From: Zancudomyces culisetae HAW-14-8
Lineage: Eukaryota; Fungi; Kickxellomycota
Length of the DNA stretch: 64,000 nt
Direction of reading: 5' to 3'
Assembly: GCA_052426225.1 (NCBI GenBank)
Contig: JBNJNM010000012.1
Span: 1,860,001-1,924,000, forward strand
Both the position numbers and the translations under genes were made by a program. Positions within the stretch are counted from its first letter, which is position 1. Every line of letters starts with the position of its first letter. Below, piece after piece: positions 10,453 through 47,658 of this stretch. The notes below the pieces were generated by a model that worked only from the letters and a program-made list of their open reading frames with translations, was not told the DNA's origin and did not search any database.

Positions 10453-10460
10453 GCTTGTGA

Positions 10461-10882
10461 TGTTAACTTTCGACCCTTTTCTGCTAGTAGTCGTAGTTAT
10501 TCGTATTTAGTTGGTTTAAAATTTAATAGACAAGTTAATTATCTACTTGTTTTGTTCGAAACTCTAACTAACTATTAAGACTTGTTTATTATTTTGGTTA
10601 TTATTCTTTATTTTTTATTGCTAAAAAGTTGTTCTTCCTAAAAAGTAATTCTTCCAAACTATAAATAAAATTTATATATAAACTATTTTTTTTTCCATCT
10701 ATTTTGTTATCTCAATTTTTTTGTGATATCAATTTTTGTTTTGTAATTTCTTGGCTCATTAAAAAAACCCAAATTGTTAGGGAAAAAAGTGTCCAATTTT
10801 TCCACTAATTTTAATATAGTAATTTATCAGAATTGACTTTGTCAATTCGTATTTTTTGTAATATATAAATAATTATGCAACA
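10461..10882. mobile_element. Solo LTR S1 (422 bp), TSD GTGA, 8 nt upstream of tRNA-Gln
   Basis: TGTTAAC...TATGCAACA flanked by GTGA (10457-10460 and 10883-10886); visibly similar to the T2 LTR at 45575-45900. Confidence 0.9.
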
Positions 10883-10887
10883 GTGAT

Positions 10888-11287
10888 TGTTGTGTAAAAA
10901 TTTGGTTTACTGGTTCGGCACGTATAGCGACACGTTGCCGAACAATTAATGATTGTCGCTGAATCTGATTGTTGAAGGAACTCGTACAAGCATTTTCTCC
11001 ATTGTGGTTTTTGCTTGTATACAACAATTAGATTCGTATTTACTATTATTATTATATTTACTTTAACATGGATTATATTTAGTTTTAAACTCTTATATAC
11101 AGCGTTAGAGGACACAAGGTACCTCGTCGGATTTTTCTCTTCACATAGCGAATTAGTTCTTTATTTATAAATTAAATAAATAGTAATATATCATAAAGTG
11201 AACGGTCCTGAACCAAAACATTAGTATATCAGCGTCGTTGCACTGATATATATAAATAAATAATAAAACTTGAAAATTTATGCAACA
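10888..11287. mobile_element. Solo LTR S2 (400 bp), TSD TGAT
   Basis: TGTTGTGTAAA...TTTATGCAACA with inverted-repeat termini, flanked by TGAT on both sides. Confidence 0.88.
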
Positions 11288-11291
11288 TGAT

Positions 11292-11698
11292 AGTAATATT
11301 ATTTTAAATATGTTTGCCTTTTTAGGGGCTTTGTACTCAACTCCGAACTCTATCGCACTTGTATAGTTTTTATCCTACACCCTTGCTAATAGTTCGTTTT
11401 ATGAAGTTAGTACAGTCGTAATTTTTGTATATCTTATTTTTGTTTTTTTTTTTATTTTCTTCTTCAAAACTGTGTATAAATGATATATATCTTTTGTTAT
11501 CTCTAAAACTAATTATAAAACTTTTCCTGATAACGACTAACCTGTTATCAAGGATAGAAATTGGATAAAACCCTCCATAGGGAGAAAAGTCCAATCTCCA
11601 ATGAAATAAATATGATAAAATAAATATGATAAACTACATATGATAAATAAACTGCCAATCAAAGCTAGAAGGTATGAACTATCATTAATTATATGACA
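11292..11698. mobile_element. Solo LTR S3 (407 bp), TSD TGAT, non-canonical AG left end
   Basis: AGTAATA...TATATGACA flanked by TGAT; carries the GGAGAAAAGTCCAAT motif shared with S1, S6, S12 and T2. Confidence 0.8.
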
Positions 11699-12111
11699 TG
11701 ATATATCTTTCTAAATATATATTTAAAAATAGACTATTAGCTAAACTATTATTTAATACTTATTAATTATAAGTTAATCTTTAAATATTGTTTAGATAAT
11801 ACTATGTTTATTTTAATAAAAGATTGGTGTCGTTACCATTTTGGATACTAAATCCTTCTTTTTATATTGAAATGACTATAAATATAAATGTTGTATAAAA
11901 GTATTCTAAAGTATAAAATATTCTAAAGTATAAAATATTCTCGATATTAGAAAAAGTCTAAAAACTAATTCGAGATTCCTAGAATAAAAACTTATATTAA
12001 ATATAAAATTAAACGTAATCTAGAAAGTAATTAATAAAGTTTTAATAATTTGATAATAATTGTTGTATTAACTCAGTTCTAGATGAGGTGTACTTCTCTA
12101 AAAATATATCA
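11699..12111. mobile_element. Solo LTR S4 (413 bp), TSD CTTG; S1-S3 inserted into its first 4 nt
   Basis: TGATATAT...ATATATCA followed by CTTG (12112-12115); the left CTTG is at 10454-10457. Same family as S8. Confidence 0.88.
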
Positions 12112-12119: not shown

Positions 12120-15100
12120 TGTCGTGAATTATAATCACCGCAATTTATAATTTTTTCCCACTGGGTTTTTAATAAATTGCTAAGATGGTTAGATTAAATT
12201 CACGTTACATTCCCGTAAATCCGCATGACAAAGCATTTCAGATGGATCGACAGTTGAGAAAATCATCCCCAACACGTTTATAAATTTTAATGACTGGATT
12301 TACAATTTTAGCTTATGTTTCATTTACTTGTTTCAGATTATTATTATTTCACATGTTATCATAAAATTTCTATGATTAAGTATTTTATTAGGATTATAAT
12401 TTTTACAGAATTTATATATAAGGTTTAGTATTTCTAAAATAAAACATCATCAGTTCTCAAATACAGTTTTACTTATACTATATTTATACGACAGTTATAT
12501 ATATAATATAAATTATGGTGATCCAGCCAGGACCAAACCCGAGCCAAACCAGACAGTCAAGTCAGACAATCAAGACAAGACAAGACAATACCAAACCAGA
12601 CCAGAACAGATCAGAACAAACAGAACAAGCTGAAAAGCCAGAGCTGACAGAAAAGGCAGAGTACACCAAGGATATCAAGAAAATGATAGGGGTGAAGGAA
12701 AGCCAAGTCTTCAGGACAGTAAGAGTTAGTGAACCACCTGTATTTAACAACTTGCCGGACCAGAATGCAGCTATATGGATGAAGAAATTTGAGTTATTCG
12801 GCCGCAGCGAAAACTGGACAGCTGAAGATAAACTGGAATACATTGAGGTATATTTTGGAAATAGGATATACTTGTGGAATGAGAGGACAGCAGTCAAAGT
12901 CAACACTTGGGATGAGTATAAGACAGAATTTTTAAAGAAGTTTGATATCAAAGATTCTGTACTAAACTCGTGGCGTGCCTTACAACGGATAAGACAATAC
13001 TCAATGGAGAGTGTGGAAGAGTTTGTAGCACGACTAGAAAGATTGTTCTCATCAGCACAAGTAAAAGATGACGCCATCATGTATCAATGTCTAATGACCG
13101 CTTTATTGCCGCAATACCAGACCGAAATACTGAAAAGCAAGGTTAATAAGTACGACGAAGCCGTCCAACAAGCCGTTGAGTTTGAGGAGTTAGAAAAGTT
13201 CATACAGGATAATGTATACTCAGCCGGTCAGCAAAGAAACAGAAGGCAGCAAGAAGTACGACAAGACACAAGAGGTTCGGTACGCAATGATAACAGAGGG
13301 GGTTTACACGTTGTAAAACAAAAAGTAAAACCAGAATTCAAGACACCAGTAGAAGCTAAAGAAAACAGTGTAGAGGCAAGTTACTATCCCAAATATCCAA
13401 GAGTCACCTGCTATACGTGTAATGAAGTAGGACATATCAGCCCACAGTGCCCTATCAGAAACAATGCAAGTGGAAACCCGAATTACACCGATAAACTTAA
13501 GGACGTTAACGTAGTTGAGTTATATCAAGGAACTCAGAATGACGTTATAGCAGACCTAGAGCAGCGTTGAAGTGACCTGAGCATAATTGAGAAGCGCAAG
13601 CTCTTAGACGGCGATAAAGGAGAAGACTAAAAGAAAGTTAAACATAGTGTCAGTATTCCCGAAGCAATAGGCCAGGATAAGTTTAATATTATTAGTAAAG
13701 GTATAGTTTTAAATAATAAGGCAAACCAGGAAGGGATGCAAAAAGATAATAACATAAACATTAATAAAGTATACGAGGCAAAATCAGAGAGACAAGAATA
13801 CTCTGTTAGGAAAGATATAAAAACAGTAAAAGCAAACATCACCTTAGATCAATTAATCAGGGTATCGCCTACTGTAAGAGCAGAATTAAAAGAAGTATGG
13901 GAGAACAACCATAATGAAGAGCCAAGAGAGTTGGGAACTCTATTTCAAGCGCCCAGTACAAATTGTAGGGCAAAGATATGGCTATTTAACCAAGAATGTA
14001 AAGTCGTGATTGATACAGGAGCAGCTTGCAGCGTTGTCACCAACGCTTTAGCCACAGACCTCAAACTTTCAGTGGATAAGAAATCCCAGGAAATTATCAT
14101 GACAGCTGATGGGAGCGTTCATCGCACAATAGGGAAGGCATGGAACGTACCCATAAATATTAAAAATATTACCTTCCCTGCAGACCTGTTAATTATGTCT
14201 AGCAACAAGGAAACATTCGTGCTTGGAGTTGACTGGCTCAAAACGCACAACGTAGTTATAGACATCACCAATAATAAGGTGATGATACCACATAATAACT
14301 CCACAGTTTCATTAGAGATTTCAACGATAGTTGAAGAACCCGAAGAGGTAGTCGGGTGGGCCAAGGAAGTAGCATTAGTTGAAAATAAGCCCAAAGTTGA
14401 AAACGATATTGCACAGTTATTGGTGCATTATAATGACATATTTGCTTCATCACTAGAAGAGTTGACAAGCACAGACTTAGTCGAGCACTCAATCGACACT
14501 GGGGACCACAAACCCATTCGTCAGAGACCTTATAGAGTACCTCAATCTATGCAGGTTAAGGTTAGAGAAGAACTAGCTACCATGCTAAAAAATGGTGTTA
14601 TAGAAAGATGCCACTCGGACTGGTGCTCACCAGTGGTAACCATTGTCAAAAAGAATGGTAAATTAAGAGTATGCTCAGATTACCGCCAGTTAAACGCCAT
14701 CACCAGAAGAGACAACTATCCTTTACCTAACATTTCAGATATCTTTAACGCTCTAGCTGGAGCAGAATTCTTTACGACGCTAGACGCCCTTAGTGGGTTC
14801 TGGCAGGTAAAAATTCGTGAAGCTGATAAAACAAAAACAGCCTTTTCATTTCCTGGAGAAGGTTTATATTGTTATAAGGTCATGCCCTTTGGACTTAGCA
14901 ATAGTCCCGCGACCTTTCAAAGACTAATGGAGTCTATTTTACAACCTGTTTTATGGAAATCAGTGGTCGTCTTTATAGACGACATTGTAGTATTTTCCAC
15001 ATCATTCAGTCAACACTTATTAGACATAAAAGTAGTTTTTGATTTAATTAAGGTGGCAAAAATAAAATTGAACGATGAGAAATGCGTGTTTGCCCAACAG

Positions 15101-17511
15101 CGCATATCATATCTGGGCCACGCGATTTCTAAAAAGGGGATTGAGACAGATCCATCAAAGTCGGCAGCAATTTCTAAGCTACCATACCCAAACAACATTA
15201 AAGAAATTCAAAGCTTTTTAGGCTTAACCGGTTATTATCGCAGGTTTATAAGAGATTACGCAAGAATAAGTAAACCATTAACATTGATGTTGCGCAAAGA
15301 CCATCCATGGAGTTGGAATGAAAGTTGTTCAGAGGCTGTGGACAAGTTAAAAGAAATGCTCAGTAAACCACCAGTGCTCAAACACCCAGACTGGGATAGA
15401 GAGTTTACCATATCCACAGACGCATCAAAACAAGGATTAGGTGCCATATTAAGCCAGTGTTACGATGGAAGAGACTGGCCAGTTGCATATGCCAGTCGTA
15501 CTTTATCTAAAGCCGAAGAAAATTATTCCATCACTCACTTAGAGGGGCTAGGTGTAGTTTGGGGAGTGACACATTTCAGACACTATGTTTTAGGACGCCC
15601 ATTTAAGATCATTACTGACCACTCCGCTCTAATTAATATTTTTAAATCAAAAGAGCCTACAGGTCGGCTAGCCCGCTGGGAAATTACTCTGAAAGAGTAC
15701 GATTACACCATAGAACACCGAAAAGGTGCTAACAATCCCGCTGACCACCTATCAAGATTTACCTCCAGTTCAATGGATAAAATGCACCAAGACATTGAAA
15801 CGAAAGCTTTATTTGCGATGAGTATTGTCAGATATGAAACTATAATGAAGTATTTAACTAACAGAGCTTATCCATCTGGGTTAAATGAGGAAGAAAAATT
15901 AGAGTTCAGAAAGAAGGCTAATTCATACAAAGTCAGCGACAATAGATTAGTTTCAGTAAGCAAACGGTTTGGACAAAGAGAAGTACTCAATGAATCCAAT
16001 GCAGAAGAAAAAATTCAGGCTATTCACGACCAAGAGCATAGTGGAATAGGAAACACATGGGAAAGGGTCAAACTTTTATACACAGGTTCTAGAATATTTG
16101 ATATTGTTAAAAGAGTTGTTAAGTTTTGTGTCCTTTGCCAAAGATTCAAAGGGCATATTAGTAAAGTGAACCCGCTGCATCCCATAGCTTCAGCAAAACC
16201 TTTTGAGATACTGGGAATCGACGCCATGGGGCCGATCAATCCGGTATCTGATAGTGGTAATAGGTATTTACTGACAGCTATGGATTACAATACTAAATGG
16301 CCAATATCGCGAGCCGTACCTAACATAAGCACAGAAATAGTTGTAAATATCCTAATTTATGATGTAGTTGCACTTTATGGTGTTCCTAAACAGCTGATTT
16401 CAGATAGAGGAGCTAACTTTATAAGTGAAATAGCAACAGAGTTCTATAAGTTTTTAGGTATAGAACATCGACCCACCACTGCATACCGACCACAGGCCAA
16501 TGGCCAAGTGGAAAGGTTTAACCAATACCTTAAAAATGTTTTGTCTAAATATTGTTACAAAGACAGACATAATTGGGATAAGTATTTATGGAAAGTCCTA
16601 TTAACAATACGCTCTACTAAAAATCGAAATATTGGTGTGAGTCCTGCTGAAAGTTTATATGGTGTAAAATTAAACACACCTGTATATTGGAACCCAAATG
16701 TGACTATTGAAAATGAAGAAGAGGCCACATTAGAGCGACTCAAGTTTATACGAGAAGAGTTACCAATTATTAGGGCTCAAGCGTACAACAATATAGTTAT
16801 CAACAAAAAGTATGAAAAACAAAAGTATGATAAAGCAGTTAAAGCGTATCAATATAAAGTAGGTGACAAAGTTCTTCGCATAGTAGCCGCACCCCAATCT
16901 AAGTTTTCTGATCGTTGGGAAGGTCCATATACCATTGTAAGAGTACTAGACAAGGGTACTTATATCATAATGGACGCTAATATGAACAAAGATCAAGTTA
17001 ATGGCGATCGGTTGAAACCGTACCATGAACGAGGCTATATGATTCCGGAAGTCGTGCCAAGTAGAATCAGAACTACGTTGCAGTACTACAAGCAAAGTAG
17101 TCAGTCAGACCGAGACGTCTGACATCAAGAGGGGGTCTGTCGTGAATTTTAATCACCGCAATTTATAATTTTTTCCCACTGGGTTTTTAATAAATTGCTA
17201 AGATGGTTAGATTAAATTCACGTTACATTCCCGTAAATCCGCATGACAAAGCATTTCAGATGGATCGACAGTTGAGAAAATCATCCCCAACACGTTTATA
17301 AATTTTAATGACTGGATTTACAATTTTAGCTTATGTTTCATTTACTTGTTTCAGATTATTATTATTTCACATGTTATCATAAAATTTCTATGATTAAGTA
17401 TTTTATTAGGATTATAATTTTTACAGAATTTATATATAAGGTTTAGTATTTCTAAAATAAAACATCATCAGTTCTCAAATACAGTTTTACTTATACTATA
17501 TTTATACGACA
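12120..17511 (+). mobile_element. Full-length Ty3/Gypsy element T1 (no chromodomain); LTRs 12120-12493 and 17138-17511 (374 bp), TSD CATT
   Basis: TGTCGT...ACGACA LTRs with one difference seen; CATT at 12116-12119 and 17512-17515; PPT AAGAGGGGG 17127-17135; PBS-like TGGTGATCCAGCCAGGAC at 12516. Confidence 0.97.
12515..17122 (+). pseudogene. T1 gag-pol, one reading frame interrupted by two in-frame stops (TGA 13568, TAA 13628)
   Basis: Gag with CCHC knuckle (CYTCNEVGHISPQC), protease DTGA, RT FIDD, RNase H TDAS, integrase HHCC/DDE and WEGPY. Both ORFs are in the same frame. The real start is probably ATG 12683, because ATG 12515 overlaps the PBS. Confidence 0.88.
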
Positions 17512-17514
17512 CAT

Positions 17515-18202
17515 TGTTGTAATTTTAGTTTGCAGAAAATTTCTCAGGAAATTTCCGCAACTTAACCTACAAAAAGTTCTGCTAATAGAGGGGGATTGTT
17601 ACTGGAGAAAGTTTTACTTTATTTAACCAGTCAACCCTACCTTTTTAGCTTATATTTAATTTAGTTTTATGTATTTATTACTTCAATAAATGCGATAAAA
17701 CTGGGTAAAATTACGCCCAGCTCCTAAAATTTGGTGTGCAAAACAATAAATTTTGGTCCAAAAATTAGACTCTGATACCTTTCTGATACCCTTTGAAAAT
17801 TGTGTTACGCTTCACTACCTATGTTTTTTTTTGGTTTTAGGTAGGTTTTTGCTCAAATCACAAATTTCAATTTTATAGAGTAAAATCAGTTATTTTAGAG
17901 CTAATTTATATTTTATTTAATGAATAACTTTTAAAAATATAAAGATATAACCACCAAACTTGTGGTGGGATTACTAGTAATATAATAGTACCTGACTAGC
18001 TATTTTATTAGAACTTTATATAATAGAAACTTAAAATAAAACAATTAAAACTATATATTTCTCCAACATTTGGGTAATTTATTACCCAAGAAATTCCAGA
18101 TTTCTTGCTCGAACACCCGAGATAACGGTGGTTATTCGGTGTTTGAGAAGCAGTGTGCTGTTCACCCAATAGTTTAGATTGGGTAGAACTAAGCATACAA
18201 CA
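17515..18202. mobile_element. Solo LTR S5 (688 bp), TSD GCAT, related to T3 LTR
   Basis: TGTTGTA...GCATACAACA followed by GCAT; similar blocks to 49444-50039 and the same GCATACAACA end. Confidence 0.88.
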
Positions 18203-18206: not shown

Positions 18207-18570
18207 TGTTAACGAATTTGTATATTTATATAGAAAATCCGTTTATTTAATAGTTATGTTGGTTTTTAGGGATATAAGTGGCGTAGAATCTACTTGTGGC
18301 TTCGATTAATGGGCTCACTTAATCCGTTATAATGATCTTAAAAATATCTACTAATGGCTAAATATTGCAAACTCTTAGTATATGTGTTTATTTTCTAAAA
18401 AGATATGATAAGAACCAAAACTTACTATCGAAATTTCTCACTAAAAAAACTAACAAAAATTGCCAAGAAAAAAAGAGTCCAATTTCTAAAATAATTTTGA
18501 TTACGTATTTCCATTGAATTTCTTCAATTTCCATACACTATTTTTATAAAGTATAAAATATTATACGACA
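18207..18570. mobile_element. Solo LTR S6 (364 bp), TSD GCAT
   Basis: TGTTAAC...TTATACGACA flanked by GCAT on both sides. Confidence 0.9.
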
Positions 18571-19444
18571 GCATGTTATCAAAAGCTCAGATTCACAGCT
18601 ATTGTTTTATCAATTAGTTGGAAACTATTATAGTAATTATACTATGTACTATTATATTATAAGTTTTCACTAAAATACTTAAGTTCCTGTGTAGAACCAA
18701 CTTTATTAAATTGATATTTTTTCTTTCTAGGTCTTTTAAACTACCTATTTATACAAAATTCAAATACTAATAAAAATTAATTTATACTAATAAACTACTT
18801 ATTTTTTTACTTTCTTATCATGTCATAGAAAGACCATAAAGATAAAAAAACTATACATGATTCCTACAAATAAATAAACATATGCAAACATTCATGATTT
18901 GCATAAACAAATACTACTTAAAATATACTAATAAAATATGCACAGACTACTTCTGTGTTTACTAATAATAAATAATATGTATAAACTACAAACAAATATT
19001 AAACAATTAAGTCAAACAATTAAGTATAATTGTCACGACTTGACACTAAGTAATATATGTTTACTTGGCTATGATTTATTTAATAAAATACTATGAGATG
19101 AAAAGTATTTTATTGCTAAAGTTTCCTAAAGCAATAAAATCCTTGTCATTATATAGTTTTACAATATACAAAATTAATTGTAAAACATTATAAAAACTAT
19201 ACTTAAACTATAACTTAAACTAAATAATATTAACTGTCAACTCCACAGTTAACATTTAATAATATGGGGTAAAACCAAATTAATAAAATTTATTAATTCT
19301 TACTCCATAAATTATTAATATATGGAGTAAGAATTAAAGCGGAGAAAACGTTAATAAATTTAACATTTGCTATTTTTAATATGTTATTAAAAATAGCAAT
19401 AATATCATGAATGGATCATGACATCACTCCCCTCTAATGCCTAC

Positions 19445-22400: not shown

Positions 22401-23602
22401 TTGATAGGCACCTTTTGTTGGAACTCAATATCACAAGAACGTTTGCGAATTGGTTCAACCGGATCAGCTGGTGGTGGAGTCATCGGGCGTAACTCTTCAA
22501 AAGTTTCCATATCAGCACTCTGAATACTATTTTCAGAGTCGGCACTTTGAATTGAGATGTCGCTGATATCGGAACTTGGTGAATAGTACAGCTCAGAATC
22601 CAACGAATACACTGATTCAAGTTCATAATCTAAATCTGTTTCATATTCTGGATCAGAAATTTTATCATCATTTTCAGAATATGAGGTGGATTCTTGATCC
22701 TGAACTGACTCAATGACTTCTTGGTTGTGTACTTGGTTATGGGGATCCTGGTTTAAGTTTCCCTGGCTATGGTTAATATTTTTCTGGCTATTTACAGTAT
22801 TTTCCTGGCTATTGTAAGTATTAACCTGGCTATGGTTTTCCTGGCTGTGGTTTGTCTCCTGGTTAAAATTTTCCTGGCTGTGGTTACTTTGGCAATGGAT
22901 AGTCTGACTGTGGTTATCTTTAACATGGTTTTCCAGGTTGTTAGTTTCCTGACTTTGGGTTTCTTGGCTGAGGTTATTCTGGCTAATTAGTGCTGGTCCT
23001 GGTCCTGGTCCTGGTGCTTGTCTTGAAATGACTGAGGTATTAGTCTTGATAATCGTTGGATTGGATTTTTGAGGAGAGAACCTTTTGATTATGCAGTGTT
23101 TTTGGCAATATGCATTATCAAAATGAATTAATCTCTTCTTCCAATTGATAGTGGGTTCATGGAGTTCAAGCCACGGAAGTCCTAAAATCATGTCAACATG
23201 GTGGGAGTTTATGATTTCAAACGTGGCTACTTCTTGGTGAACTCCAATCTTGATCTTGAGCGGGACAGTTTGGTGTGTGATTGGACCGGCAGACATTGGA
23301 GTACCATCTACAAACTCCACAGGTATTGGAGTTGTTTTGGAAACGGATGGAATCGAATGGTTAGATACAAAACCTTGGTTTATGAACAAACCAGAAGCAC
23401 CTGAATCTACCATGGCGACGATTTGCAACTTTACGTTACTTGGGAGTAGTAAAGAAACAGTGACAAGAAAACGATGGGGGTTGTAGACGTCTCGGATACT
23501 GCTGACTTGATGGACAAAGGATCTGGAACGGGGGAAGTCTTTGGTTGGGATGGTTTGGTTCAGGATTGGCTTCCCAATTAAGCCTGAACCCGGTGGTTTC
23601 TC
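19445..23602 (-). pseudogene. C1 Pol (PR-RT-RH-IN-chromodomain), -1 frame to gag, one premature stop at 20507-20509
   Basis: DSGA, YLDD, ECDAS, integrase, chromodomain EEYEVAAILD...WKGY..EDRTWE. RP*ESVSMDF has TGA where the Trp of the conserved PW motif is expected. Confidence 0.9.
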
Positions 23603-24468: not shown

Positions 24469-25513
24469 AATAGTAGGTAGTGTAAGAGCAATAAAATAAT
24501 GTCACGACTTGACATAAGTACTATATGTTTACTTGGCTATGATTTATTTAATAAAATACTATGAGATGAAAAGTATTATATTGCTAAAGTTTCCTAAAGC
24601 AATAAAATCCTTGTCATTATATAGTTTTACAATATACAAAATTAATTGTAAAACATTATAAAAACTATACTTAAACTATAACTTAAACTAAATAATATTA
24701 ACTGTCAACTCCACAGTTAACATTTAATAATATGGGGTAAAACCAAATTAATAAAATTTATTAATTCTTACTCCATAAATTATTAATATATGGAGTAAGA
24801 ATTAAAGCGGAGAAAACGTTAATAAATTTAACATTTGCTATTTTTAATATGTTATTAAAAATAGCAATAATATCATGAATGGATCATGACAATAATATGA
24901 TAAATATTAATTATTTACAAGAAATAATCATAAAATCATATAAATATTTATATAAATGATAAACATATAGGTATGTTTACTCATTATATAACATGCATTG
25001 ATATAACTTTCTAAATATATGTTTGAAATTAGACTGTCATGAACTGATTCTAGAATGTTCGAAAACGTTCTAGAATCATTTGATTTTATTCCGCAGTAAT
25101 GTTTAGAATGTTCCCCAACATTCTAGAACATTACCGAAAATTCACATTATTTCTTAATTTTTCTTACGTAATAATTTTCACATGTTTAATTTTATTAGCA
25201 TTCGAGTTTGATTTTTGTTTGATTACTAATCCAATTTGATTAGTAATCAAACACGTTTTTCTTTAACTTGCATTTTTAGCTAATCCGCAGTTTTCATAGT
25301 GATTTTGTTCAAAAACCAAGGCTGGAAAAAAGTATAAAAAGGGTACAATTTTCCTGTCTTGGATTCAGTATCTAGTATCTAGTATCTTGTATACATTCAT
25401 ACAATAAACATTAATAATAATAAATATAACTTTCCAGACTCCAGATCTTGACACTATACTAGATCAAAATATTATATTTATTATTTTCTGAAACCAGCCT
25501 AAGTATTTAAACC

Positions 25514-31532: not shown

Positions 31533-31536
31533 CATT

Positions 31537-31998: not shown

Positions 31999-32001
31999 CA
32001 T

Positions 32002-32314: not shown

Positions 32315-32317
32315 GCA

Positions 32318-32636: not shown

Positions 32637-32721
32637 TGCATTGATAACTTCTTTCTCTATTATTTGTTAAAGTTAATATTTATTTGATTTTTTATATTTA
32701 ATAGTTTAGTTTAAATATCTA

Positions 32722-39100: not shown

Positions 39101-40329
39101 TAGTTTATCATCAAGGGTTCATGTCACTATTGACACATTGTCAGATACTAACATTTTTATGCAAGTATCTCTTTTATTTTATACTATATGCTAAATATAA
39201 AACTATGTTATTCTATTTTTAAATAATACTATGTTCTATTTCAGACCTAATTGTATATCTTTTTATTCCTAAATTAACTATTTATTGTGTAACTTTTATA
39301 AAAAACTAACTAAAAATCTCTTATATAAGATACTACTAAAAAATTATATTAAAAAACGAAATGTTATTAAAAAAAATCACTAGGATAAAAAAACTAATGC
39401 ATTTCGGATTCGTAACCAGTTACGAATCGATTGTCAATTTGCTATATGACAGCATGTTAAAATAAGATTATTGTAATATATTTTTCTCTACTTATTTATT
39501 ATCACTATACTATATTTGTTTTAACTTTATATACTGTATACTTAATATTATTCTGATAGTTTGAGAAAAGAGTTGTATTTATTTTTCTTGTTGTGAGAGG
39601 TCCTTTTGACCCCTAAAATTGTTCATACTAGTCTGAAATAAATTATACCTATAAAATAACTTCGGACAAAAACCACGAGGGGAAAAAGGTCCAATCTAAA
39701 AATATTGCTAATTATATAATCCTAAACTAATAACTAATAATTAAATTCGTTCCTATCATATTATTATACGACATGCATTGATAACTTCTTTCTCTATTAT
39801 TTGTTAAAGTTAATATTTATTTGATTTTTTATATTTAATAGTTTAGTTTAAATATCTATGTCATGAACTGATTCTAGAATGTTCGAAAACGTTCTAGAAT
39901 CATCTGATTTTATTCCGCAGTAATGTTTAGAATGTTGGGAAACATTCTAGAACATTACCGAAAATTCACATTATTTCTCAATTTTTCTTACGTAATAATT
40001 TTCACATGTTTAATTTTATTAGCATTCGAGTTTGATTTTTGTTTGATTACTAATCCAATTTGATTAGTAATCAAACACGTTTTTCTTTAGCTTGCATATT
40101 TAGCTATTCCGCAGTTTTCTAGTGATTTTGTTCAAAAACCAAGGCTGGAAAAAAGTATAAAAAGGGTACAATTTTCCTGTCTTGGATTCAGTATCTAGTA
40201 TCTTGTATACATTCATACAATAAACATTAATAATAATAAATATAACACTCCAGACTCCAGATCTTGACACTATACTAGATCAAAATATTATATTTATTAT
40301 TTTCTGAAACCAGCCTAAGTATTTAAACC

Positions 40330-41550
40330 ATGGAACCGTTTAGCCCAGAACAAGTTGAATTCCTCAACAAAGCCGCCGTGACCCTGCCAGCAGTTGAAGA
40401 AGCCCTCCAGCAACTACTAATAAGAGTAGAAAAAGCCGAGTCTGCCATCAAGGAACACCCTGCCACAGTATCCAAGAAAATTTATGACAAGGTCAAAGCA
40501 GACACCACCAAGTCCATCCAGACCATTCTTGACTCCATGAACAACCTCCAGTCCGATATCCAGAATTCAGACCAGCTAACCCAAAGCGCCATACAGGCCA
40601 ACCAGTCGGAAATCCAATCCCTTCAGGACCAGCTCAGTACCCTCAGGGACGAAGTCATACTTTATATAACTGAAAACCGTGCCACCAAAGTTGCTAGTAC
40701 TTCTGAACCTAGTATCAAAGTCAGACACCCAGACACATTTTCAGGAAAACCCTCCGCCTGTTCCAACTTCTTTTCACAGCTTGCTCTCGTCTTTGCCGCT
40801 TCACCCGACAAATTCAACACTGACTCAAGTAAAGTCTTGTATGCCATCTCCTACCTCTCAGGAACACCATTCAATTACATGGAACCTTACCTCATGAAAG
40901 CAAACCTTCCAGAGTCTGACCGTCCTGCCATTCTCTCCAACTACAATCTGTTTAAAGAAACTATCACTCGTGCCTTTGGTGATCCCAACCCTATTGAGAA
41001 TGCTGACAGGGCAATCCGCCAACTCAGACAAACCACTTCCGTTGCCGCATATGCCACCGAGTTTAGACGCCTACAGATGTTAATTGACTGGAACCAACCA
41101 CCTTTGATCTCACAGTTTCTATCCGGTCTCAAGTACAACGTATCCCAGGAACTCAGCCGTAGAGAACCAATAGAAGACATCGATACCCTGATCTCTACAG
41201 CCATCCAGATCGACAACCGCCTCTTCAGCCATCCACAACGTCGTCAACCTCCAGTTAACCCCACTGCAACTATGCCACCCAAACCCACTGCTTACAACCC
41301 GTTTGCTTCACCTGTTTCTGCACCATCTACCACTCCACCAGCTAATAGTGATGGACCTCAACCAATGGATCTCAGTACCGCTTCATCGACTAGAAGACCA
41401 CCACTTACTCCTGCTCAAAGAGCATACCGTATCGAAAACAACCTCTGTCTCCATTGTGGCGGTAATGACCATTTCAACATCAACTGTCCAAAGAAACGCC
41501 ACAACATCTCCAGCATTACACCAACACAGGAAAACGACACCGCCCAGTAG
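40330..41550 (+). CDS. C2b Gag
   Basis: Near-identical to C2a Gag. Confidence 0.95.
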   Translation: MEPFSPEQVEFLNKAAVTLPAVEEALQQLLIRVEKAESAIKEHPATVSKKIYDKVKADTTKSIQTILDSMNNLQSDIQNSDQLTQSAIQANQSEIQSLQDQLSTLRDEVILYITENRATKVASTSEPSIKVRHPDTFSGKPSACSNFFSQLALVFAASPDKFNTDSSKVLYAISYLSGTPFNYMEPYLMKANLPESDRPAILSNYNLFKETITRAFGDPNPIENADRAIRQLRQTTSVAAYATEFRRLQMLIDWNQPPLISQFLSGLKYNVSQELSRREPIEDIDTLISTAIQIDNRLFSHPQRRQPPVNPTATMPPKPTAYNPFASPVSAPSTTPPANSDGPQPMDLSTASSTRRPPLTPAQRAYRIENNLCLHCGGNDHFNINCPKKRHNISSITPTQENDTAQ

Positions 41551-44500
41551 ACAGTAAGGGACACCTATTGGGCAACTTAGCCAGTCCCCACGCCACTGTA
41601 ACCACTCCTGTTTCTGACACCCAATCTCCTGATAAACCAAACACCTTGACCATTCCTGTAACCATCTTGTTCAAGCACCACCACATCAAAACCTACGCTA
41701 TGGTTGACTCTGGTGCTTCGTCCTCGTTCATTGACGCCACCTTTGCTCTAAAAAACAATCTACCATCTATATCTAGAAAAATGACAATCACTCTCGCTGA
41801 CGGATCAAAGCTTAGATCCAACTCTGCCTCCCAAGTAACACTAAAAATCAACGATAACCATCTCGAAAGTATCTATCTGCAACAACTAGATCTTGGATCT
41901 TCACCGATCATCCTTGGTCTTTCCTGGCTTCAACAACACAATCCTGACATCAACTGGACTGAGAACATAGTCCATCTGCCGTGTACCTTGACTTCTTGTG
42001 GGCCCAACCATGTCAACCTAGACATCTCTCTTGTGGGCTCAAACCAGTTTAAAGAACATCTGAAGGCACCAGACACTGTCTATGCTGGTGCAATTACCGT
42101 GAACAATCTTGAATCCCTTGTAGCTCCTGAATCTTGTGAAAATCTCTGTTTTGTCTCTGAATCTAATCCTGAAACCCCTGATACTCCTGTAATCCCTGAA
42201 AAGTATAAAATGTTTGAATCTGTCTTCTCTGAATCCCAATCTGCCAAACTGCCTGAACATCGTCCATATGATCATACCATTCCTTTGCTTCCTGACTCAA
42301 AGATACCATATGGCCCATTGTACAACCTCTCCCAATTGGAACTAAAGACCCTGTACGACTATATTCAGGAAAACCTAGCCAATGGTTTTATCCAACGCTC
42401 TGAATCCCCGGCTGGGGCTCCCGTCCTATTTGTAAAAAAGAAAGATGGTAGTCTCCGGTTGTGCGTCGACTATAGAGCCCTGAATAAGATCACTGTCCCC
42501 AACCGTGCAGCCTTGCCACTCATCTCTGAAACCTTGGATCGGCTTGGCAAAGCCAAGATATTCACCAAGCTGGATATGAAATCCGCATACCACATGATCA
42601 GGATCTCGCCTGGTGAAGAATGGAAGACCGCGTTTCGTACACGCTACGGCCACTTCGAGTATAAGGTCATGCCGTTTGGCCTTATGAATGCTCCAGCCAC
42701 GTTCCAGTCCTTTGTTAACGATCTCTTCCGTGAATACATTGATCAATTCCTTGTTGTGTACATCGATGATCTGTTAATCTACTCAGATGATATCGATAAG
42801 CACTATGACCACGTCTGCCTTGTCTTGAAGAAGCTTCAGGAACACAATCTCACCCTCAAGCTAGAGAAATGTGAGTTTGATGTACAATCAGTACAGTTCC
42901 TCGGTTTTGTAATTGGCCCCAACGGAATCTCTATGGATCCATCTAAAGTATCCAGCGTTACCGAATGGAAGACACCAACTTGTGTCCGTGACGTTCAGGT
43001 ATTCCTTGGCCTTACAAACTTCTACCGCCGTTTTATTCTGAACTACTCCAAGATATCTCTGCCACTCACCGCCTTGTTGAAAAAAGGTGTCCAATTCCAG
43101 TGGACACTCAAAGCTGAAGAAGCTTTCGCCTTGCTAAAAGAAACCATGATCAGTAACCCAGTCTTAGCTCACTACAATCCTGACCAGCCTTGTATCATCG
43201 AAACCGATGCATCAGATTTTGCATTAGGTGCCATTTGCAGCCAGTATGACAACGAGGGACAGCTCCACCCTGTTGCATACTACTCCCGGAAACTCCTGCC
43301 TGCTGAAGTGAATTACCAAGTCTATGATAAGGAACTGTTAGCAATTATCGACGCTTTTGCTCACTGGCGTCACTACCTTGAATTTTCTGTACACCCAACC
43401 GTTGTTATGACCGACCATAAAAACTTGGAATACTTCTCCACTACCAGAAATCTTAGTCGCCGCCAAGTCAGATGGTCAGAATACCTCAGTAACTTCAACT
43501 TTGTCATCAAGTACCGCCCTGGAAAACAGAACACTGCCGCCGATGCTCTTTCTCGGAAAGACCAACCTTGGAAGGGGGGTGACTCCCGTACTGACCAAAA
43601 CAAAATAACTTTGCTACCTCCTGAAATCTTCTTGAAGTCCATGACTAGTACACCTGTTGAACCTTTGTCCTCCACGCTCATGAACAACATCAAGTCACTA
43701 CAACCCAAAGACACGTACTTTGGACCCATTTACACTGACTTATCCAAGAAACCTGATTCCCATGAAAAGTACACTCTTGTTGACAATCTTCTGCACTATG
43801 ATGGACTAATCTGTATCCCCTCGGACGACAACATCAAAAGAACTATCCTGATTGAATGCCATGATTCCCCTGCTGCCGGCCACTTTGGAAATGCAAAGAC
43901 ATACGAACTTGTATCTCGCAACTTTTACTGGCCAACCATGAGAAAATATATCAAAGACTACATCTCTGGTTGCGATACCTGTCAACGCAACAAATCCTCT
44001 CGCCATAAACCATATGGCTACCTCGCTCCACTTCCCGTTCCTGATTCACCTTGGTCATCTGTTTCTGTCGACTTCATCACTCAGCTACCTCCATCCAATA
44101 ACTTTACTGCAATCTGTGTATTTGTGGATCGCCTTACCAAGATGGCGCATTTTGTTCCCACAACCAATGAAATTGATGCTGAAGGTACTGCAGATCTGTT
44201 TATCCAACATATCTTCTGCAAACATGGACTCCCTAACGACATCGTATCTGATAGAGGTGTAACCTTCAATTCATCATTCATGCGTACTCTAATGAAATCA
44301 CTGAATATTGAACAGAAAATGTCCACCGCATTCCATCCTCAGACAGATGGACAAACTGAACGCGTAAACTCAGTATTGGAACAGTATCTCAGGTGCTACA
44401 TTGATTACCAACAAACTGATTGGTCAAAGTGGTTACCAATTGCCGAATTCGCCTACAACAACACATCTCATGCTTCTATTAAGACCACACCTTTCTACGC

Positions 44501-45146
44501 CAACTATGGCTTCCATCCACGCTTCTCAGTCACAATTCCTCGTACTCAAGTTTTAAATCCTGCCTCCTCTGATAGATCCAAACGACTATCTGATATCCAC
44601 CAAGAACTGAAGTTTAACATCTCCCTTGCCCTTGAAGACCATGAGAAATACTACAACCGAAAAGTATCATCACAACCTGACTTCAACATTGGTGATCTTG
44701 TCTATCTATCAACTAAAAACATCAGGACTCAAAGACCAAGCAAGAAGCTTGACTATCGGAAACTTGGTCCATTCAAAGTATTGGAAAAGATTGGACAAAG
44801 ATCATACAAACTTCAGCTACCACACACAATGAAGATTCACCCAGTATTCCACGTCAATCTCCTTGAAACTTGTAAACCAGATCTGATCCCAGACAGACTA
44901 TCAAAACCGCTTCCACCTGTGATCATTGATGGTCAAGAAGAATATGAAGTTGAGAAAATCCTAGATAGTAAAATATTTGGTAGAACTGTCAAATACCTGG
45001 TACACTGGAAAGGATACCCAGACACTGAACGTACCTGGCAAACATATTCTGACTTAGCAAATGCAAAATATCTTGTCACTGAATTCCATCGTCACCATCC
45101 TGAAAAACCAAAGCCACCACAAATGCTTCACGGAGCTCAGCCTTAA
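41529..45146 (+). CDS. C2b Pol with chromodomain (-1 frameshift)
   Basis: Near-identical to C2a Pol; same slippery site. Confidence 0.95.
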   Translation, partial: GKRHRPVDSKGHLLGNLASPHATVTTPVSDTQSPDKPNTLTIPVTILFKHHHIKTYAMVDSGASSSFIDATFALKNNLPSISRKMTITLADGSKLRSNSASQVTLKINDNHLESIYLQQLDLGSSPIILGLSWLQQHNPDINWTENIVHLPCTLTSCGPNHVNLDISLVGSNQFKEHLKAPDTVYAGAITVNNLESLVAPESCENLCFVSESNPETPDTPVIPEKYKMFESVFSESQSAKLPEHRPYDHTIPLLPDSKIPYGPLYNLSQLELKTLYDYIQENLANGFIQRSESPAGAPVLFVKKKDGSLRLCVDYRALNKITVPNRAALPLISETLDRLGKAKIFTKLDMKSAYHMIRISPGEEWKTAFRTRYGHFEYKVMPFGLMNAPATFQSFVNDLFREYIDQFLVVYIDDLLIYSDDIDKHYDHVCLVLKKLQEHNLTLKLEKCEFDVQSVQFLGFVIGPNGISMDPSKVSSVTEWKTPTCVRDVQVFLGLTNFYRRFILNYSKISLPLTALLKKGVQFQWTLKAEEAFALLKETMISNPVLAHYNPDQPCIIETDASDFALGAICSQYDNEGQLHPVAYYSRKLLPAEVNYQVYDKELLAIIDAFAHWRHYLEFSVHPTVVMTDHKNLEYFSTTRNLSRRQVRWSEYLSNFNFVIKYRPGKQNTAADALSRKDQPWKGGDSRTDQNKITLLPPEIFLKSMTSTPVEPLSSTLMNNIKSLQPKDTYFGPIYTDLSKKPDSHEKYTLVDNLLHYDGLICIPSDDNIKRTILIECHDSPAAGHFGNAKTYELVSRNFYWPTMRKYIKDYISGCDTCQRNKSSRHKPYGYLAPLPVPDSPWSSVSVDFITQLPPSNNFTAICVFVDRLTKMAHFVPTTNEIDAEGTADLFIQHIFCKHGLPNDIVSDRGVTFNSSFMRTLMKSLNIEQKMSTAFHPQTDGQTERVNSVLEQYLRCYIDYQQTDWSKWLPIAEFAYNNTSHASIKTTPFYANYGFHPRFSVTIPRTQVLNPASSDRSKRLSDIHQELKFNISLALEDHEKYYNRKVSSQPDFNIGDLVYLSTKNIRTQRPSKKLDYRKLGPFKVLEKIGQRSYKLQLPHTMKIHPVFHVNLLETCKPDLIPDRLSKPLPPVIIDGQEEYEVEKILDSKIFGRTVKYLVHWKGYPDTERTWQTYSDLANAKYLVTEFHRHHPEKPKPPQMLHGAQP

Positions 45147-47658
45147 GAGGGGAGGTCGTGTCATGAACTGATTCTAGAATGTTCGAAAACGTTCTAGAAT
45201 CATCTGATTTTATTCCGCAGTAATGTTTAGAATGTTGGGAAACATTCTAGAACATTACCGAAAATTCACATTATTTCTCAATTTTTCTTACGTAATAATT
45301 TTCACATGTTTAATTTTATTAGCATTCGAGTTTGATTTTTGTTTGATTACTAATCCAATTTGATTAGTAATCAAACACGTTTTTCTTTAGCTTGCATATT
45401 TAGCTATTCCGCAGTTTTCTAGTGATTTTGTTCAAAAACCAAGGCTGGAAAAAAGTATAAAAAGGGTACAATTTTCCTGTCTTGGATTCAGTATCTAGTA
45501 TCTTGTATACATTCATACAATAAACATTAATAATAATAAATATAACACTCCAGACTCCAGATCTTGACAATCTACTTGTTAGATTCGAACTAAAAACTCA
45601 CTATTAATGTTTTTTCTTTATAAAACTGTTTATTTAGTTTAATAGTTTTATAAATAATAATATTAATATGTGTATTCCAAAAAAGATATGTTTATTAAAC
45701 TCAAGCTAATTCCTATATAAACTATTTTTTATGCTATTTTTTATCTCAATTTTTCTTGTTATCTATTTTTTCTTGGCTCATAAAAAATAACCCAATGCAC
45801 AGGATAAAAATAGTCCAATTTTTCAAATAATTAATTTTGTTAGTTCTCAAATTATCTTATATTATTTGTATAAATATAAAATATATACTTTTATACGACA
45901 GAACCCCCTTCCCAAATTGAACGTACTGTGTTTTTAAAACGGTGAAGCTTTGAACGCAACTGTGAGGACACTTCAGGAACCATATGGGTGCTGTGGTGGT
46001 ATTTTTTTAGTGAATCGCCATTCACAATGTCGCGATTTCCCTCGGAATCGGTAATCAGGTAAGCTCCTAAATTTAACTTTTTTAGAATCCGGTATGGCCC
46101 TTCCCATACTTCTTGAAACTTATCGGTAGCATGTTCGACTAGCTTCATGACCATTTGGTCAATTTTGAAATTCACAAATTTTACTTTTTTATCGTATGCT
46201 GTCTAAATATTTTGTTTAGCTTTAACACTATTTTGGTATCCTATTTCACGTAACTCAGGTATGTTAGTATTTATAGATTCGATTCTTTCCTGTATTGCAA
46301 GTTCCAAATCACTAATTTCGGCCGGCGGTGACCACAATGATGGTGTAGTCAACTTTACACCATATAGTAACTCGGCAGGACTATAACCAGTACTTCTATT
46401 TCTCATGGTTCGTATGGCGAGTAATGTTTTAGACAGGTAAGCGTCCCAGTTTTTCTCATCTTTTTTGCACTGCCTTGACAGTACATTTTTTAGCGTCTGA
46501 TTAAGGCGCTCAACCATGCCGTTTGTCTGAGGTCTATAGGATGTTGCTGGAGTATGCTTTATGCCTAGAAAGTTGTGTACGTTTTCTGCTGCCTCACTGA
46601 TAAATCCTGGACCTCTATCGGTTATAATTTGGTCAGGTGTACCAAAATTCTGCACTATTTGAGTAACAATAAAATTAATAATTGTATCTGACCTAATATT
46701 TTCGACTGCTTCAGCTAACGGCCACCTTGTGAAGTAGTCGATGCCAGTCAGTATATATCTATTTCCGTTAGTAGAAGGAGGACTAATCGGCCCTACGGCA
46801 TCCAACCCAATGATTCCAAAAGGCTTATGCGAATATATTGGCTGCATTTCATTATTTCTTGTTCTACTTCCTTGATAGCTTTGACATACAACGCATTCTT
46901 TTACTGTCTTTTTTACTGTTTTAAATAAATCACGTCCTGTATATTTTTCTGAAATCTTCCTCCAAGTGTTTTCAATACCTTGGTGCGCTTCTTCGTGTAT
47001 AGATTTGACCTTTTCATTAATATTTTAGTCCAATAATACTTTTTTACAAATCCCTTTACACTGTCTAAATAAAATATTGTTTAATAATTGAATTTTTTAG
47101 ATAGTATATATATTTTTCCTTTAGTAACTTCATCACTTTGAGGAGGGAGCCTATTATGAAGTAAATAATCTTTTATAGTTTCATTTGATATACGAGTAAC
47201 TGCTAACACATCTATAGGTTCTTCTGGTATAGTTTTAGATTCTAATCTCGATAGAACATCGGCGGGATTAGATTTTCCTTGGCATAGATTTTCCTTGGCA
47301 GTGAATGACTGAGTAATTATAATTTCGTAGAATCATAGCCCACCGGGCCACACGTCCAGTTATATCCTTGCCGTCAAAAAGTTTCAATAGGGCTTTATGA
47401 TCCGTTCGGATTGTAAAGTGTCTGCTCCAAAAGTAATGTTTAAATTTTCTTACCCCCCATACAACTGCCAATCCCTCCAGATGAGTGATTAAGTAATTTT
47501 TTTTTGTTTATTTGTCGTTTTGCTTGCATATAAAATAGGTTTTTCGCCGAGTTCAGTGACTTGAGTCAAGATAGCTCCAACACCATCAACCGAAGCATCT
47601 GTGGTAAGAATAAACTCCAACTGCCAATTTGGATGCGCTAATGTTGGTGCACTACATA

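What the first reader, a model, noticed from the sequence alone, without database searches (positions are those of the whole stretch)
10453..47658. Polarised stack of 14 LTR-retrotransposon insertions, each made 5-9 nt upstream of one tRNA-Gln gene: a chronological insertion record
Seen: the apparently featureless AT-rich DNA resolves into back-to-back LTRs separated only by 4-bp TSDs. From the tRNA outward (TSD, offset): S1 GTGA 8, S2 TGAT 9, S3 TGAT 9, S4 CTTG 5, T1 CATT 9, S5 GCAT 8, S6 GCAT 8, S7 TGCA 7, S8 GCAT 8, S9 CATT 9, S10 CATT 9, S11 GCAT 8, S12 TGCA 7, T2 GCAT 8 (distal copy lost). Removing them one at a time from the tRNA side explains every junction base and collapses ~37 kb to tRNA-GCTTGCAT. 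Known: Ty3 (S. cerevisiae) and DGLT-A (Dictyostelium) integrate upstream of tRNA genes. Inference: a diverse Gypsy clade shares one Pol III-defined landing pad, and the locus grows from one end like a CRISPR leader. I do not know of a described locus with this depth, family diversity and proximity, but could not search the literature.
Basis: partly seen in the sequence, partly recalled or inferred. Interest (0 to 1): 0.95.

Follow-up and report, generated by a model that had tools for sequence, protein, structure and literature searches.

The report
tRNA-anchored stack of LTR retrotransposon insertions
In the mosquito-gut fungus Zancudomyces culisetae, a diverse clade of Ty3/gypsy retrotransposons inserts a few bases upstream of tRNA genes, and 14 successive insertions upstream of one tRNA-Gln gene form an ordered record, later enlarged by three untargeted elements and a tandem duplication.

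Summary
Removing the units one at a time gives a perfect 4-bp TSD at offsets 5-9 each time and leaves tRNA|GCTTGCAT.

Three chromoviruses (V, A1, A2) with 5-bp TSDs sit inside older LTRs. A 4x tandem array of period 2379 arose by unequal exchange between the A1 and A2 LTRs; its inner LTRs are A2/A1 chimeras. Only about 12.7 of 37.2 kb comes from tRNA-targeted insertion.

- At least 34 of 56 sampled nuclear tRNA loci carry an LTR starting mostly 6-9 nt upstream, from 23 LTR clusters.
- Five of the S families have full-length copies with identical LTRs and intact gag-pol.
- Eight sampled elements form one chromodomain-less clade, separate from the chromoviruses and less like Ty3 than those are.
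- In the other sequenced strain (GCA_001969505.1) the same tRNA and 8-nt leader are followed by a different LTR, so strains differ at the proximal slot.

This is a new variant of a known kind (Ty3, Tj1, DGLT-A targeting). It is not described in the papers I could search. Eight first-reader notes of this scan report the same pattern on other DNA of this genome.

The parts
10380..10452 (-). tRNA-Gln(CTG), the anchor. A TTTT run follows its 3' end.
10453..10460 (.). 8-nt leader GCTTGTGA. GCTTG is original DNA; TGA is carried over from the first bases of S4. The leader is shared with strain COL-18-3.
10461..10882 (-). S1 solo LTR, 422 bp, TSD GTGA, offset 8. Its family has at least 12 full-length copies.
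10888..11287 (.). S2 solo LTR, 400 bp, TSD TGAT, offset 9.
11292..11698 (-). S3 solo LTR, 407 bp, TSD TGAT, offset 9. Its first base is A where the family has T.
11699..12111 (.). S4 solo LTR, 413 bp, TSD CTTG, offset 5. It is 90% identical to S8.
12120..17511 (+). T1, a full-length element of 5392 bp. LTRs are 374 bp and 99.7% identical; gag and pol are intact; no chromodomain. TSD CATT, offset 9. It points away from the tRNA, opposite to the other families.
17515..18202 (-). S5 solo LTR, 688 bp, TSD GCAT, offset 8.
18207..18570 (.). S6 solo LTR, 364 bp, TSD GCAT, offset 8.
18574..24993 (.). S7 solo LTR, 554 bp, in two pieces (18574-19030 and 24897-24993) split by V. TSD TGCA, offset 7.
19031..24891 (-). 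V, a chromovirus (Chromo and SH3_Tf2-1 domains) with 5-bp TSD ATAAT, inserted inside S7. It is not tRNA-targeted.
24999..31125 (.). S8 solo LTR, 395 bp, in two pieces (24999-25034 and 30767-31125) split by A1. TSD GCAT, offset 8.
25035..30761 (+). A1, a chromovirus with 5-bp TSD TAGAC, inserted inside S8.
30343..39858 (+). Tandem array of 4 units of 2379 bp. Each unit is an A-family LTR, the rest of S8, S9 to S12, and the first 80 bp of the T2 LTR. The inner LTRs are chimeras: A2 5'LTR on the left, A1 3'LTR on the right.
31131..31532 (-). S9 solo LTR, 402 bp, TSD CATT, offset 9 (array copy 1; further copies at +2379, +4758 and +7137).
31537..31998 (-). S10 solo LTR, 462 bp, TSD CATT, offset 9.
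32002..32314 (.). S11 solo LTR, 313 bp, TSD GCAT, offset 8. The last T of its TSD is the first base of S12.
32318..32636 (.). S12 solo LTR, 319 bp, TSD TGCA, offset 7.
39859..45569 (+). A2, a chromovirus with 5-bp TSD ATCTA, inserted inside the T2 LTR.
45575..47655 (-). T2, the oldest unit. It comprises the rest of its tRNA-side LTR (45575-45900; the first 80 bp are at 39779-39858 and in each array unit), a polypurine tract, and the C-terminal 585 codons or so of pol (68% identical to S1-family pol). It has at least 13 in-frame stops and a frameshift. Offset 8; the distal TSD copy and the 5' half are lost.
47656..49266 (-). Tc1/mariner-type DNA transposon (DDE_3, HTH_Tnp_Tc3_2) with terminal inverted repeats. 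It marks the truncation point of T2.
49362..49435 (-). tRNA-Thr(AGT), a second anchor in the window.
49444..63753 (-). T3, a full-length element of the same clade at offset 8, TSD GTGC, LTRs 596 bp and 99.8% identical. Chromovirus A3 (56773-62490, TSD TTCCG) is nested inside it.

Best explanation
The genome is Zancudomyces culisetae (Harpellales), most likely the HiFi assembly of strain HAW-14-8. It carries a radiated, chromodomain-less clade of Ty3/gypsy retrotransposons. Their integration is aimed at a window about 5-9 nt upstream of the mature 5' end of tRNA genes, makes a 4-bp TSD, and has an orientation that is fixed within each lineage.

The aim is set by distance from the tRNA and not by the local sequence. 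Each new insertion therefore lands between the tRNA and the previous one and pushes the older units outward. Upstream of this tRNA-Gln that happened at least 14 times. The order from oldest to youngest is T2, S12, S11, S10, S9, S8, S7, S6, S5, T1, S4, S3, S2, S1.

Three chromoviruses later inserted inside older LTRs. Unequal exchange between the 3' LTR of A1 and the 5' LTR of A2 then duplicated the block between them, which was amplified to four copies.

Shown here: positions, TSDs, order, clade, genome-wide tRNA association, the difference between strains, and the chimeric LTRs. Inferred: the tether is the Pol III initiation machinery (TFIIIB, TFIIIC or Pol III) at the transcription start, as for Ty3, Tj1 and DGLT-A, but through a different integrase surface, because no chromodomain is present.
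For: - All 13 sequential removals give perfect 4-bp TSDs at offsets 5-9.
- Seven TSDs contain bases of the next older unit, which fixes the order directly. GTGA and TGAT use the TGAT start of S4; the last T of CATT or GCAT is the first base of S5, S11 or S12, or was carried over from S11.
- The oldest unit, T2, has at least 13 stops and a frameshift. T1 is intact with 99.7% identical LTRs.
- The best identity of each solo LTR to other genomic copies falls with distance from the tRNA (Spearman rho -0.77, p 0.004; this clock is confounded, see the Against line).
- At least 34 of 56 nuclear tRNA loci have a shared repeat starting within 15 nt, mostly at 6-9 nt, falling into 23 LTR clusters.
- Five of the S families have full-length copies with 99.7-100% identical LTRs.
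- None of the clade members has a chromodomain, whereas A1 and V do. Their integrases end 25-40 residues after the GPY/F module.
- The eight elements form one clade with SH-aLRT 100.
- The Ty3 chain 7q5b scores 519 bits with chromovirus A1 but 353-371 bits with clade members.
- Contig LSSK01000670.1 of the other strain matches window 1-10464 at 99.06% and then carries a different LTR after the same leader.
- The inner LTRs of the array are A2-left/A1-right chimeras.
Against: - No RNA or ChIP data are available, so the Pol III start site and any protein tether are unknown.
- The strain comparison covers one locus. The short-read contig ends inside the new LTR, so it cannot show whether S1 lies beneath it.
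- Identity to other copies is a poor clock. S1, the youngest unit here, is only 97-98% identical to its family.
- The tRNA census covers only the 63 best-scoring tRNA hits (Lys, Thr, Ala, Arg, Met), not all tRNA genes.
- Some offsets at other loci fall outside 5-9 nt (2-14 nt). Part of this may come from uncertainty in the tRNA 5' end call.
Confidence: 0.85

Rival explanations
1. This is a TE graveyard. LTR elements piled up here by untargeted, nested insertion into already dead or heterochromatic DNA, and the nearby tRNA is incidental.
For: Three chromoviruses (V, A1, A2) did insert inside older LTRs with 5-bp TSDs and no fixed distance to the tRNA. The whole of 10.4-64 kb is TE sequence.
Against: After those three are removed, all 14 other units map to offsets 5-9 from the tRNA with matching TSDs. 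The same families start 6-12 nt from many unrelated tRNA genes.
Confidence: 0.02
2. This is an assembly artefact. Repeats were mis-joined or the tandem array was inflated by the assembler.
For: The four 1960-bp blocks are 100% identical. I could not lay this genome's own reads on it; only one run was offered and it held 6% of the sampled words.
Against: An independent short-read assembly of another strain has the same tRNA|GCTTGTGA|LTR junction type. The inner LTRs of the array are specific A2/A1 chimeras, which a collapse or expansion error would not create. The published assembly is PacBio HiFi (PMC12611240). The copy number of the array (4) remains unverified.
Confidence: 0.04
3. The aim is set by DNA sequence, not by Pol III factors. 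The integrases prefer the TG-rich termini of earlier LTRs or a short motif, so stacks seed themselves.
For: The leaders next to many tRNAs are made of LTR-end scraps such as TGTCG and TGTTG. Insertions often fall within the first 1-4 bases of the previous LTR.
Against: TSD sequences differ widely between loci: GTGC, TGTC, AAAA, TATT, GTCT, GCAT, CTTG. The constant is the distance to the tRNA, not to the older LTR. S4 and S12, for example, inserted 3-4 nt or 1 nt before the older LTR start. The oldest unit, T2, inserted into plain GCTTGCAT.
Confidence: 0.08

Closest known systems
Ty3 of Saccharomyces cerevisiae (Metaviridae); integrase-TFIIIB tether, structure 7q5b
   Same: A Ty3/gypsy LTR element that inserts in a very narrow window just upstream of tRNA genes. 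Solo LTRs are left at tRNA genes.
   Different: Ty3 makes a 5-bp TSD at -6/-2 from the transcription start, about 15 bp from the mature tRNA end, and uses a cryptic integrase chromodomain as a ruler (PMC8632968, PMC5006619). Here the TSD is 4 bp, the offset is 5-9 nt from the mature end, and the integrase ends 25-40 residues after the GPY/F module with no chromodomain. By score, Ty3 is closer to this genome's chromoviruses than to this clade. Yeast has one Ty3 family; here there are more than 20 LTR clusters.
Tj1 of Schizosaccharomyces japonicus
   Same: It inserts within 12 bp upstream of tRNA genes (-10/-11 from the mature end) in a fixed orientation matching tRNA transcription (PMC4600332). 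Here S1, S3, S5, S9, S10, T2 and T3 all point the same way as the tRNA.
   Different: Tj1 has a 5-bp TSD and is related to Tf1/Tf2 (PMC4600332). Here the TSD is 4 bp and the clade is separate from the chromoviruses. The basal lineage T1 has the opposite orientation. The deep multi-family stacks seen here are not reported for Tj1 in that paper.
DGLT-A of dictyostelid amoebae
   Same: A Ty3/gypsy element without a chromodomain that targets the upstream side of tRNA genes. It is a case of convergent targeting. The authors note that later tRNA-specific insertions displace earlier ones outward (PMC5006619, PMC6101501).
   Different: DGLT-A sits 13-16 bp upstream and has low copy number (20 in D. 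discoideum, none full-length). Its tether is RNase H and the integrase N-terminal extension binding TFIIIC subunit Tfc4 (PMC6101501). Here there are many active-looking families with identical LTR pairs, and the tether is unknown.
Tandem LTR-block-LTR arrays made by unequal homologous exchange between LTRs
   Same: The 2379-bp array has chimeric inner LTRs, exactly as expected for exchange between the A1 3' LTR and the A2 5' LTR.
   Different: The duplicated block is not the interior of an element. It is a stack of five solo LTRs plus parts of two others.

Membership tests
Ty3/gypsy (Metaviridae) LTR retrotransposons | LTR pair with TG..CA ends flanking gag, protease, RT, RNase H and integrase in that order | tested here: met
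   Pfam domain order in T1, T3 and the S1, S3, S5, S9 and S10 family copies. LTR pairs are 99.7-100% identical.
Pol III-gene-targeting LTR retrotransposons (behaviour of Ty3, Tj1, DGLT-A) | Copies lie in a narrow window upstream of many different tRNA genes | tested here: met
   At least 34 of 56 tRNA loci are occupied, mostly at 6-9 nt. The same families occur at Ala, Arg, Thr, Lys, Met and Gln tRNAs. Enrichment is 21% against 1.3% expected.
Pol III-gene-targeting LTR retrotransposons (behaviour of Ty3, Tj1, DGLT-A) | Targeting also of other Pol III genes (5S rRNA, U6) | not tested
   No 5S or U6 loci were examined.
Pol III-gene-targeting LTR retrotransposons (behaviour of Ty3, Tj1, DGLT-A) | Physical tether between an element protein and TFIIIB, TFIIIC or Pol III; de novo insertions at the same sites | not testable with these tools
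   This needs binding and transposition assays.
Ty3 lineage / chromoviruses | Chromodomain (canonical or cryptic) at the integrase C-terminus | tested here: not met
   No Chromo or SH3_Tf2-1 hit in 8 clade members, although A1 and V have both. Only 25-40 residues follow the GPY/F module. No structure was predicted.
Ty3 lineage / chromoviruses | 5-bp target-site duplication | tested here: not met
   Fifteen clade insertions in the window have a 4-bp TSD, and so do the L056, L057, L060 and L062 copies. The chromoviruses V, A1, A2 and A3 have 5 bp.
Ty3 lineage / chromoviruses | Groups with Ty3 and chromoviruses in a pol phylogeny | tested here: inconclusive
   The clade is separate from A1 and V (SH-aLRT 100), and Ty3 scores higher with A1. 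Ty3, Tj1 and DGLT-A themselves were not in the tree.
Tj1-like fixed-orientation integration | Element always in the same direction as the Pol III gene | tested here: met
   The orientation is the same in every stack position seen, roughly 20 in all, for S1, S3, S5 and S10. The three in-stack T3-LTR copies, at or within about 1.1 kb of their tRNA, are oriented the same way; two distal T3-LTR copies and one distal S6 copy are reversed. The coding sense comes from full-length copies and points toward the tRNA. T1 is reversed.
Unequal-crossover tandem duplication | Junction repeat is a chimera of the two parental repeats | tested here: met
   Array LTRs 2-4 carry A2 5'LTR variants at alignment columns 76-121 and A1 3'LTR variants from column 232 on.

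The most novel reading that the evidence does not exclude
Aiming at Pol III start sites arose independently in a chromodomain-less gypsy lineage of Harpellales. It uses a new integrase-host interface; one candidate is the short conserved C-terminal tail (MIPEV..LRS.L.RFK) or the N-terminal region. The lineage has since radiated into more than 20 co-existing families that all compete for the same few bases. If so, tRNA-anchored stacks would be genome-wide stratigraphic clocks of TE activity, and LTR ends would continually rewrite the pre-tRNA leader.
Probability: 0.45. Interest if true: 0.75.

Novelty: new variant of a known kind. Interest (0 to 1): 0.62.

Why it matters
- It adds a further, probably independent, case of LTR retrotransposons aimed at Pol III start sites. 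This one is in an early-diverging fungus and has features not combined elsewhere: a 4-bp TSD, 5-9 nt from the mature tRNA end, fixed orientation, no chromodomain, and more than 20 families.
- Many copies have identical LTRs and intact reading frames. The system therefore looks active and could be used to find a new integrase-host tether.
- The stacks give a built-in relative time order of insertions. This is rare for transposable elements and can be checked against strain differences.
- Such records are not purely insertional. Untargeted chromoviruses and LTR-LTR exchange make up two thirds of this locus.

Tried and rejected
- **Public reads.** Only one run (X1) held 6% of the sampled words. 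Laying it gave low-depth fragments of an S3-like LTR and nothing about the junctions or the array.
- **TE-centred census.** I replaced it with a coordinates-only test against the 62 listed tRNAs.
- **Closest outside relative.** For P0122 (47% identical, inside the clade) only the run id SRR18067333 is on record, with no DNA. Contig L069 of the other strain has no tRNA.
- **Dating solo LTRs.** Identity to other copies gives a significant trend, but I do not rely on it because subfamily structure confounds it.
- **Segmental duplication between stacks.** Another stack with the same S2, S5, S10 order (L067) has different junction TSDs, so I rejected this.
- **S3 starting 4 nt earlier.** I considered the start TGATAG and rejected it. 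The family starts TGTAAT, so S3 has a changed first base.
- **Not run.** No structure prediction or complex prediction was run; the tail length argument was enough for the chromodomain question.
Full report
**Organism and setting.** The window is eukaryotic. An intronless methylsterol monooxygenase gene at 6068-7129 is 98% identical to the NCBI protein of Zancudomyces culisetae. The assembly has 27.09 Mb in 25 contigs, including one of 61,188 bp. This matches the PacBio HiFi assembly of strain HAW-14-8 described in PMC12611240. The words LTR, retrotransposon and tRNA do not occur in that paper. The window is contig C12:1860001-1924000.

**The observation.** ARAGORN finds tRNA-Gln(CTG) at 10380-10452 and tRNA-Thr(AGT) at 49362-49435, both on the minus strand. 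A self-comparison shows five full-length LTR elements and a tandem array of period 2379. I fixed the unit ends from the sequence and removed the units by script.

Two steps are needed first:
- Collapse the array by deleting 32722-39858.
- Remove three elements with perfect 5-bp TSDs: V 19031-24891 (ATAAT), A1 25035-30761 (TAGAC) and A2 39859-45569 (ATCTA).

After that, S1, S2, S3, S4, T1 and S5 to S12 come out one after another. Each has a perfect 4-bp TSD, at offsets 8, 9, 9, 5, 9, 8, 8, 7, 8, 9, 9, 8, 7. What remains is tRNA|GCTTGCAT followed by the LTR of T2. In my first run the S9 end was two bases off. All 14 values in the finding are therefore correct.

**Order of events.** The order is fixed by the sequence itself:
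- The TSDs of S1 (GTGA) and of S2 and S3 (TGAT) are built from the first bases of S4 (TGAT...).
- The last T of the CATT TSDs of T1 and S10 is the first base of S5 and S11 respectively.
- The last T of S9's CATT was carried over from S11 through the S10 duplication.
- The last T of the GCAT TSD of S11 is the first base of S12, which itself went in at offset 7.

In each of these pairs the unit nearer the tRNA must be the later arrival. Other evidence agrees:
- T2, the outermost unit, keeps only the last 585 codons or so of pol. It has at least 13 stops and a frameshift and is cut off at a Tc1/mariner element.
- T1 has intact gag and pol and LTRs that differ at one base in 374.
- The best identity of each solo LTR to other genomic copies falls with distance from the tRNA (rho -0.77). 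I treat this as weak evidence because subfamilies confound it.

- V, A1, A2 and A3 (A3 lies inside T3, TSD TTCCG) carry SH3_Tf2-1 and Chromo domains. They make 5-bp TSDs and sit inside older LTRs or elements at no fixed distance from a tRNA. They are ordinary chromoviruses.
- The 2379-bp array is a recombination product. Its four 1960-bp blocks are 100% identical. Its inner LTRs carry the variants of the A2 5' LTR on the left and of the A1 3' LTR on the right. That is the signature of unequal exchange between those two LTRs, followed by further amplification.
- Of the 37.2 kb, 12.7 kb comes from targeted insertions, 17.3 kb from chromoviruses and 7.1 kb from the duplication.

**Genome-wide test.** I took the 63 best tRNA hits, fetched 55 loci and set the mitochondrial contig aside.
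- At least 34 of 56 nuclear loci, counting the two in the window, have a repeat shared with unrelated loci that begins within 15 nt of the tRNA, mostly at 6-9 nt.
- LTRs of the S1, S2, S5, S10, S11 and T3 families occupy the first slot at Ala, Arg, Thr, Lys and Met tRNAs.
- The first-slot LTRs fall into 23 clusters at 80% identity.
- T3 at the window's tRNA-Thr is a full-length member at offset 8 with TSD GTGC.
- Of 125 family copies found in the genome, 26 have one of the 62 listed tRNAs within 15 kb on the expected side and strand, against 1.3% for random places. The real share must be higher because the tRNA list is partial.
- A second stack with the order S2, S5, S10 (L067) has different junction TSDs, so stacks are built independently.

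**The elements.**
- The S1, S3, S5, S9 and S10 families have full-length copies of 5.3-6.8 kb with 99.7-100% identical LTRs. Their gag-pol frames run to 1463-1513 codons, or are interrupted only once.
- None has a chromodomain. Their integrases end 25-40 residues after the GPY/F module, in a short conserved tail.
- In a pol tree the eight sampled elements form one clade (SH-aLRT 100). Members are about 45-57% identical to each other, and the clade is separate from A1, V and outside gypsy elements.
- The Ty3 chain 7q5b scores 519 bits with A1 but 353-371 bits with clade members. The clade is therefore not close kin of Ty3.
- Outside this species the nearest proteins are 47% identical (one unnamed run) and then 31-38% identical.
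- Orientation is fixed. In every stack position seen, S1, S3, S5 and S10 point the same way. So do the three T3-LTR copies that lie at or within about 1.1 kb of their tRNA; two distal T3-LTR copies and one S6 copy, 2.4-3.4 kb out, are reversed. Full-length copies show that this direction has the element reading toward the tRNA, as T2 and T3 do. T1, the basal branch, is reversed.

**Strain difference.** Contig LSSK01000670.1 of assembly GCA_001969505.1, the earlier short-read assembly, matches window 1-10464 at 99.06%. That stretch includes the tRNA and the leader GCTTGTGA, whose TGA comes from S4. The contig then continues for 293 nt with a different LTR (TGTTGTAGAATAATC...) where this genome has S1. 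That LTR family exists elsewhere in this genome, 97% identical at C13:1629688. Either it inserted on top of S1 in that strain, or the two strains gained different elements at the same GTGA site. Either way the difference lies at the proximal slot, as the model predicts. This is a single locus, and the contig ends inside the LTR.

**Mechanism.**
- Shown: a constant distance to the tRNA across unrelated flanks (TSDs GTGC, TGTC, AAAA, TATT, GTCT, GCAT, CTTG), a 4-bp stagger, fixed orientation, and ongoing activity.
- Inferred: the intasome is held by the Pol III initiation complex at the transcription start. This would parallel Ty3 (integrase-TFIIIB, PMC8632968), Tj1 (PMC4600332) and DGLT-A (RNase H and integrase with Tfc4, PMC6101501). 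The contact surface must differ from Ty3's chromodomain ruler.

**Comparison and novelty.** Targeting of tRNA genes by LTR elements is well known, and outward displacement by later insertions is mentioned for Dictyostelium (PMC5006619). My searches found nothing on this in Zancudomyces or Harpellales. What is new:
- the lineage;
- the combination of a 4-bp TSD, 5-9 nt offset, no chromodomain and fixed orientation;
- the number of co-existing families;
- the depth of the ordered stacks.

I rate it a new variant of a known kind. Eight first-reader notes of this scan describe the same pattern in other windows of this genome. I checked the general claim with my own census, not on those windows.

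Noticed in passing
window 47656-49266: A Tc1/mariner-type DNA transposon (DDE_3 plus HTH_Tnp_Tc3_2; 243-codon ORF on the minus strand) with inverted repeats of about 200 bp (47656-47862 against 49266-49060, 87% identical). It lies exactly where T2 is truncated, and the tRNA-Thr 3' flank follows directly. This suggests a deletion tied to this element.
   Followed up: partly
window 25035-25453, 56773-57191, 62072-62490: The LTRs of the A-family chromoviruses are mosaics. The A1 5' LTR shares variants with both A3 LTRs, and the A3 5' LTR shares others with A2. The LTR pairs of A1 and A3 are therefore only about 97% identical. This looks like gene conversion or recombination between copies and makes LTR-pair dating unreliable here.
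   Followed up: partly
loci L026, L048, L053, L054 (first 15 nt upstream of the tRNA): The few bases between many tRNA genes and the first LTR are made of repeated scraps of LTR starts (TGTCG, TGTTG). These are carried over by successive target-site duplications, so the pre-tRNA leader region is largely LTR-derived.
   Followed up: partly
loci L001, L004, L005, L008, L003, L011: Many nuclear tRNA genes come as tight pairs on one strand, separated by 1-7 nt (Lys-Ala, Ala-Lys, Arg-Lys, Thr-Thr). They are probably dicistronic units. LTRs sit upstream of the first gene of the pair.
   Followed up: no
alignment A2 (integrase C-termini; window 50072-50761 minus strand and relatives): A short tail after the GPY/F module (about MIPEV..LRS.L.RFK) is conserved among families that are only about 50% identical. 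It is a candidate interaction motif.
   Followed up: no
window 13736-17122 (T1 pol): Apart from Z. culisetae itself and one unnamed run, the nearest proteins to the clade's pol are 31-38% identical. Among the named hits these are animal gypsy elements (Trichinella, Daphnia, fish). The origin of the clade is open.
   Followed up: no
window 63754-64000: After the distal TSD of T3, the tRNA-Thr stack continues with another LTR family (related to the first-slot LTR of L028) and runs off the window.
   Followed up: no
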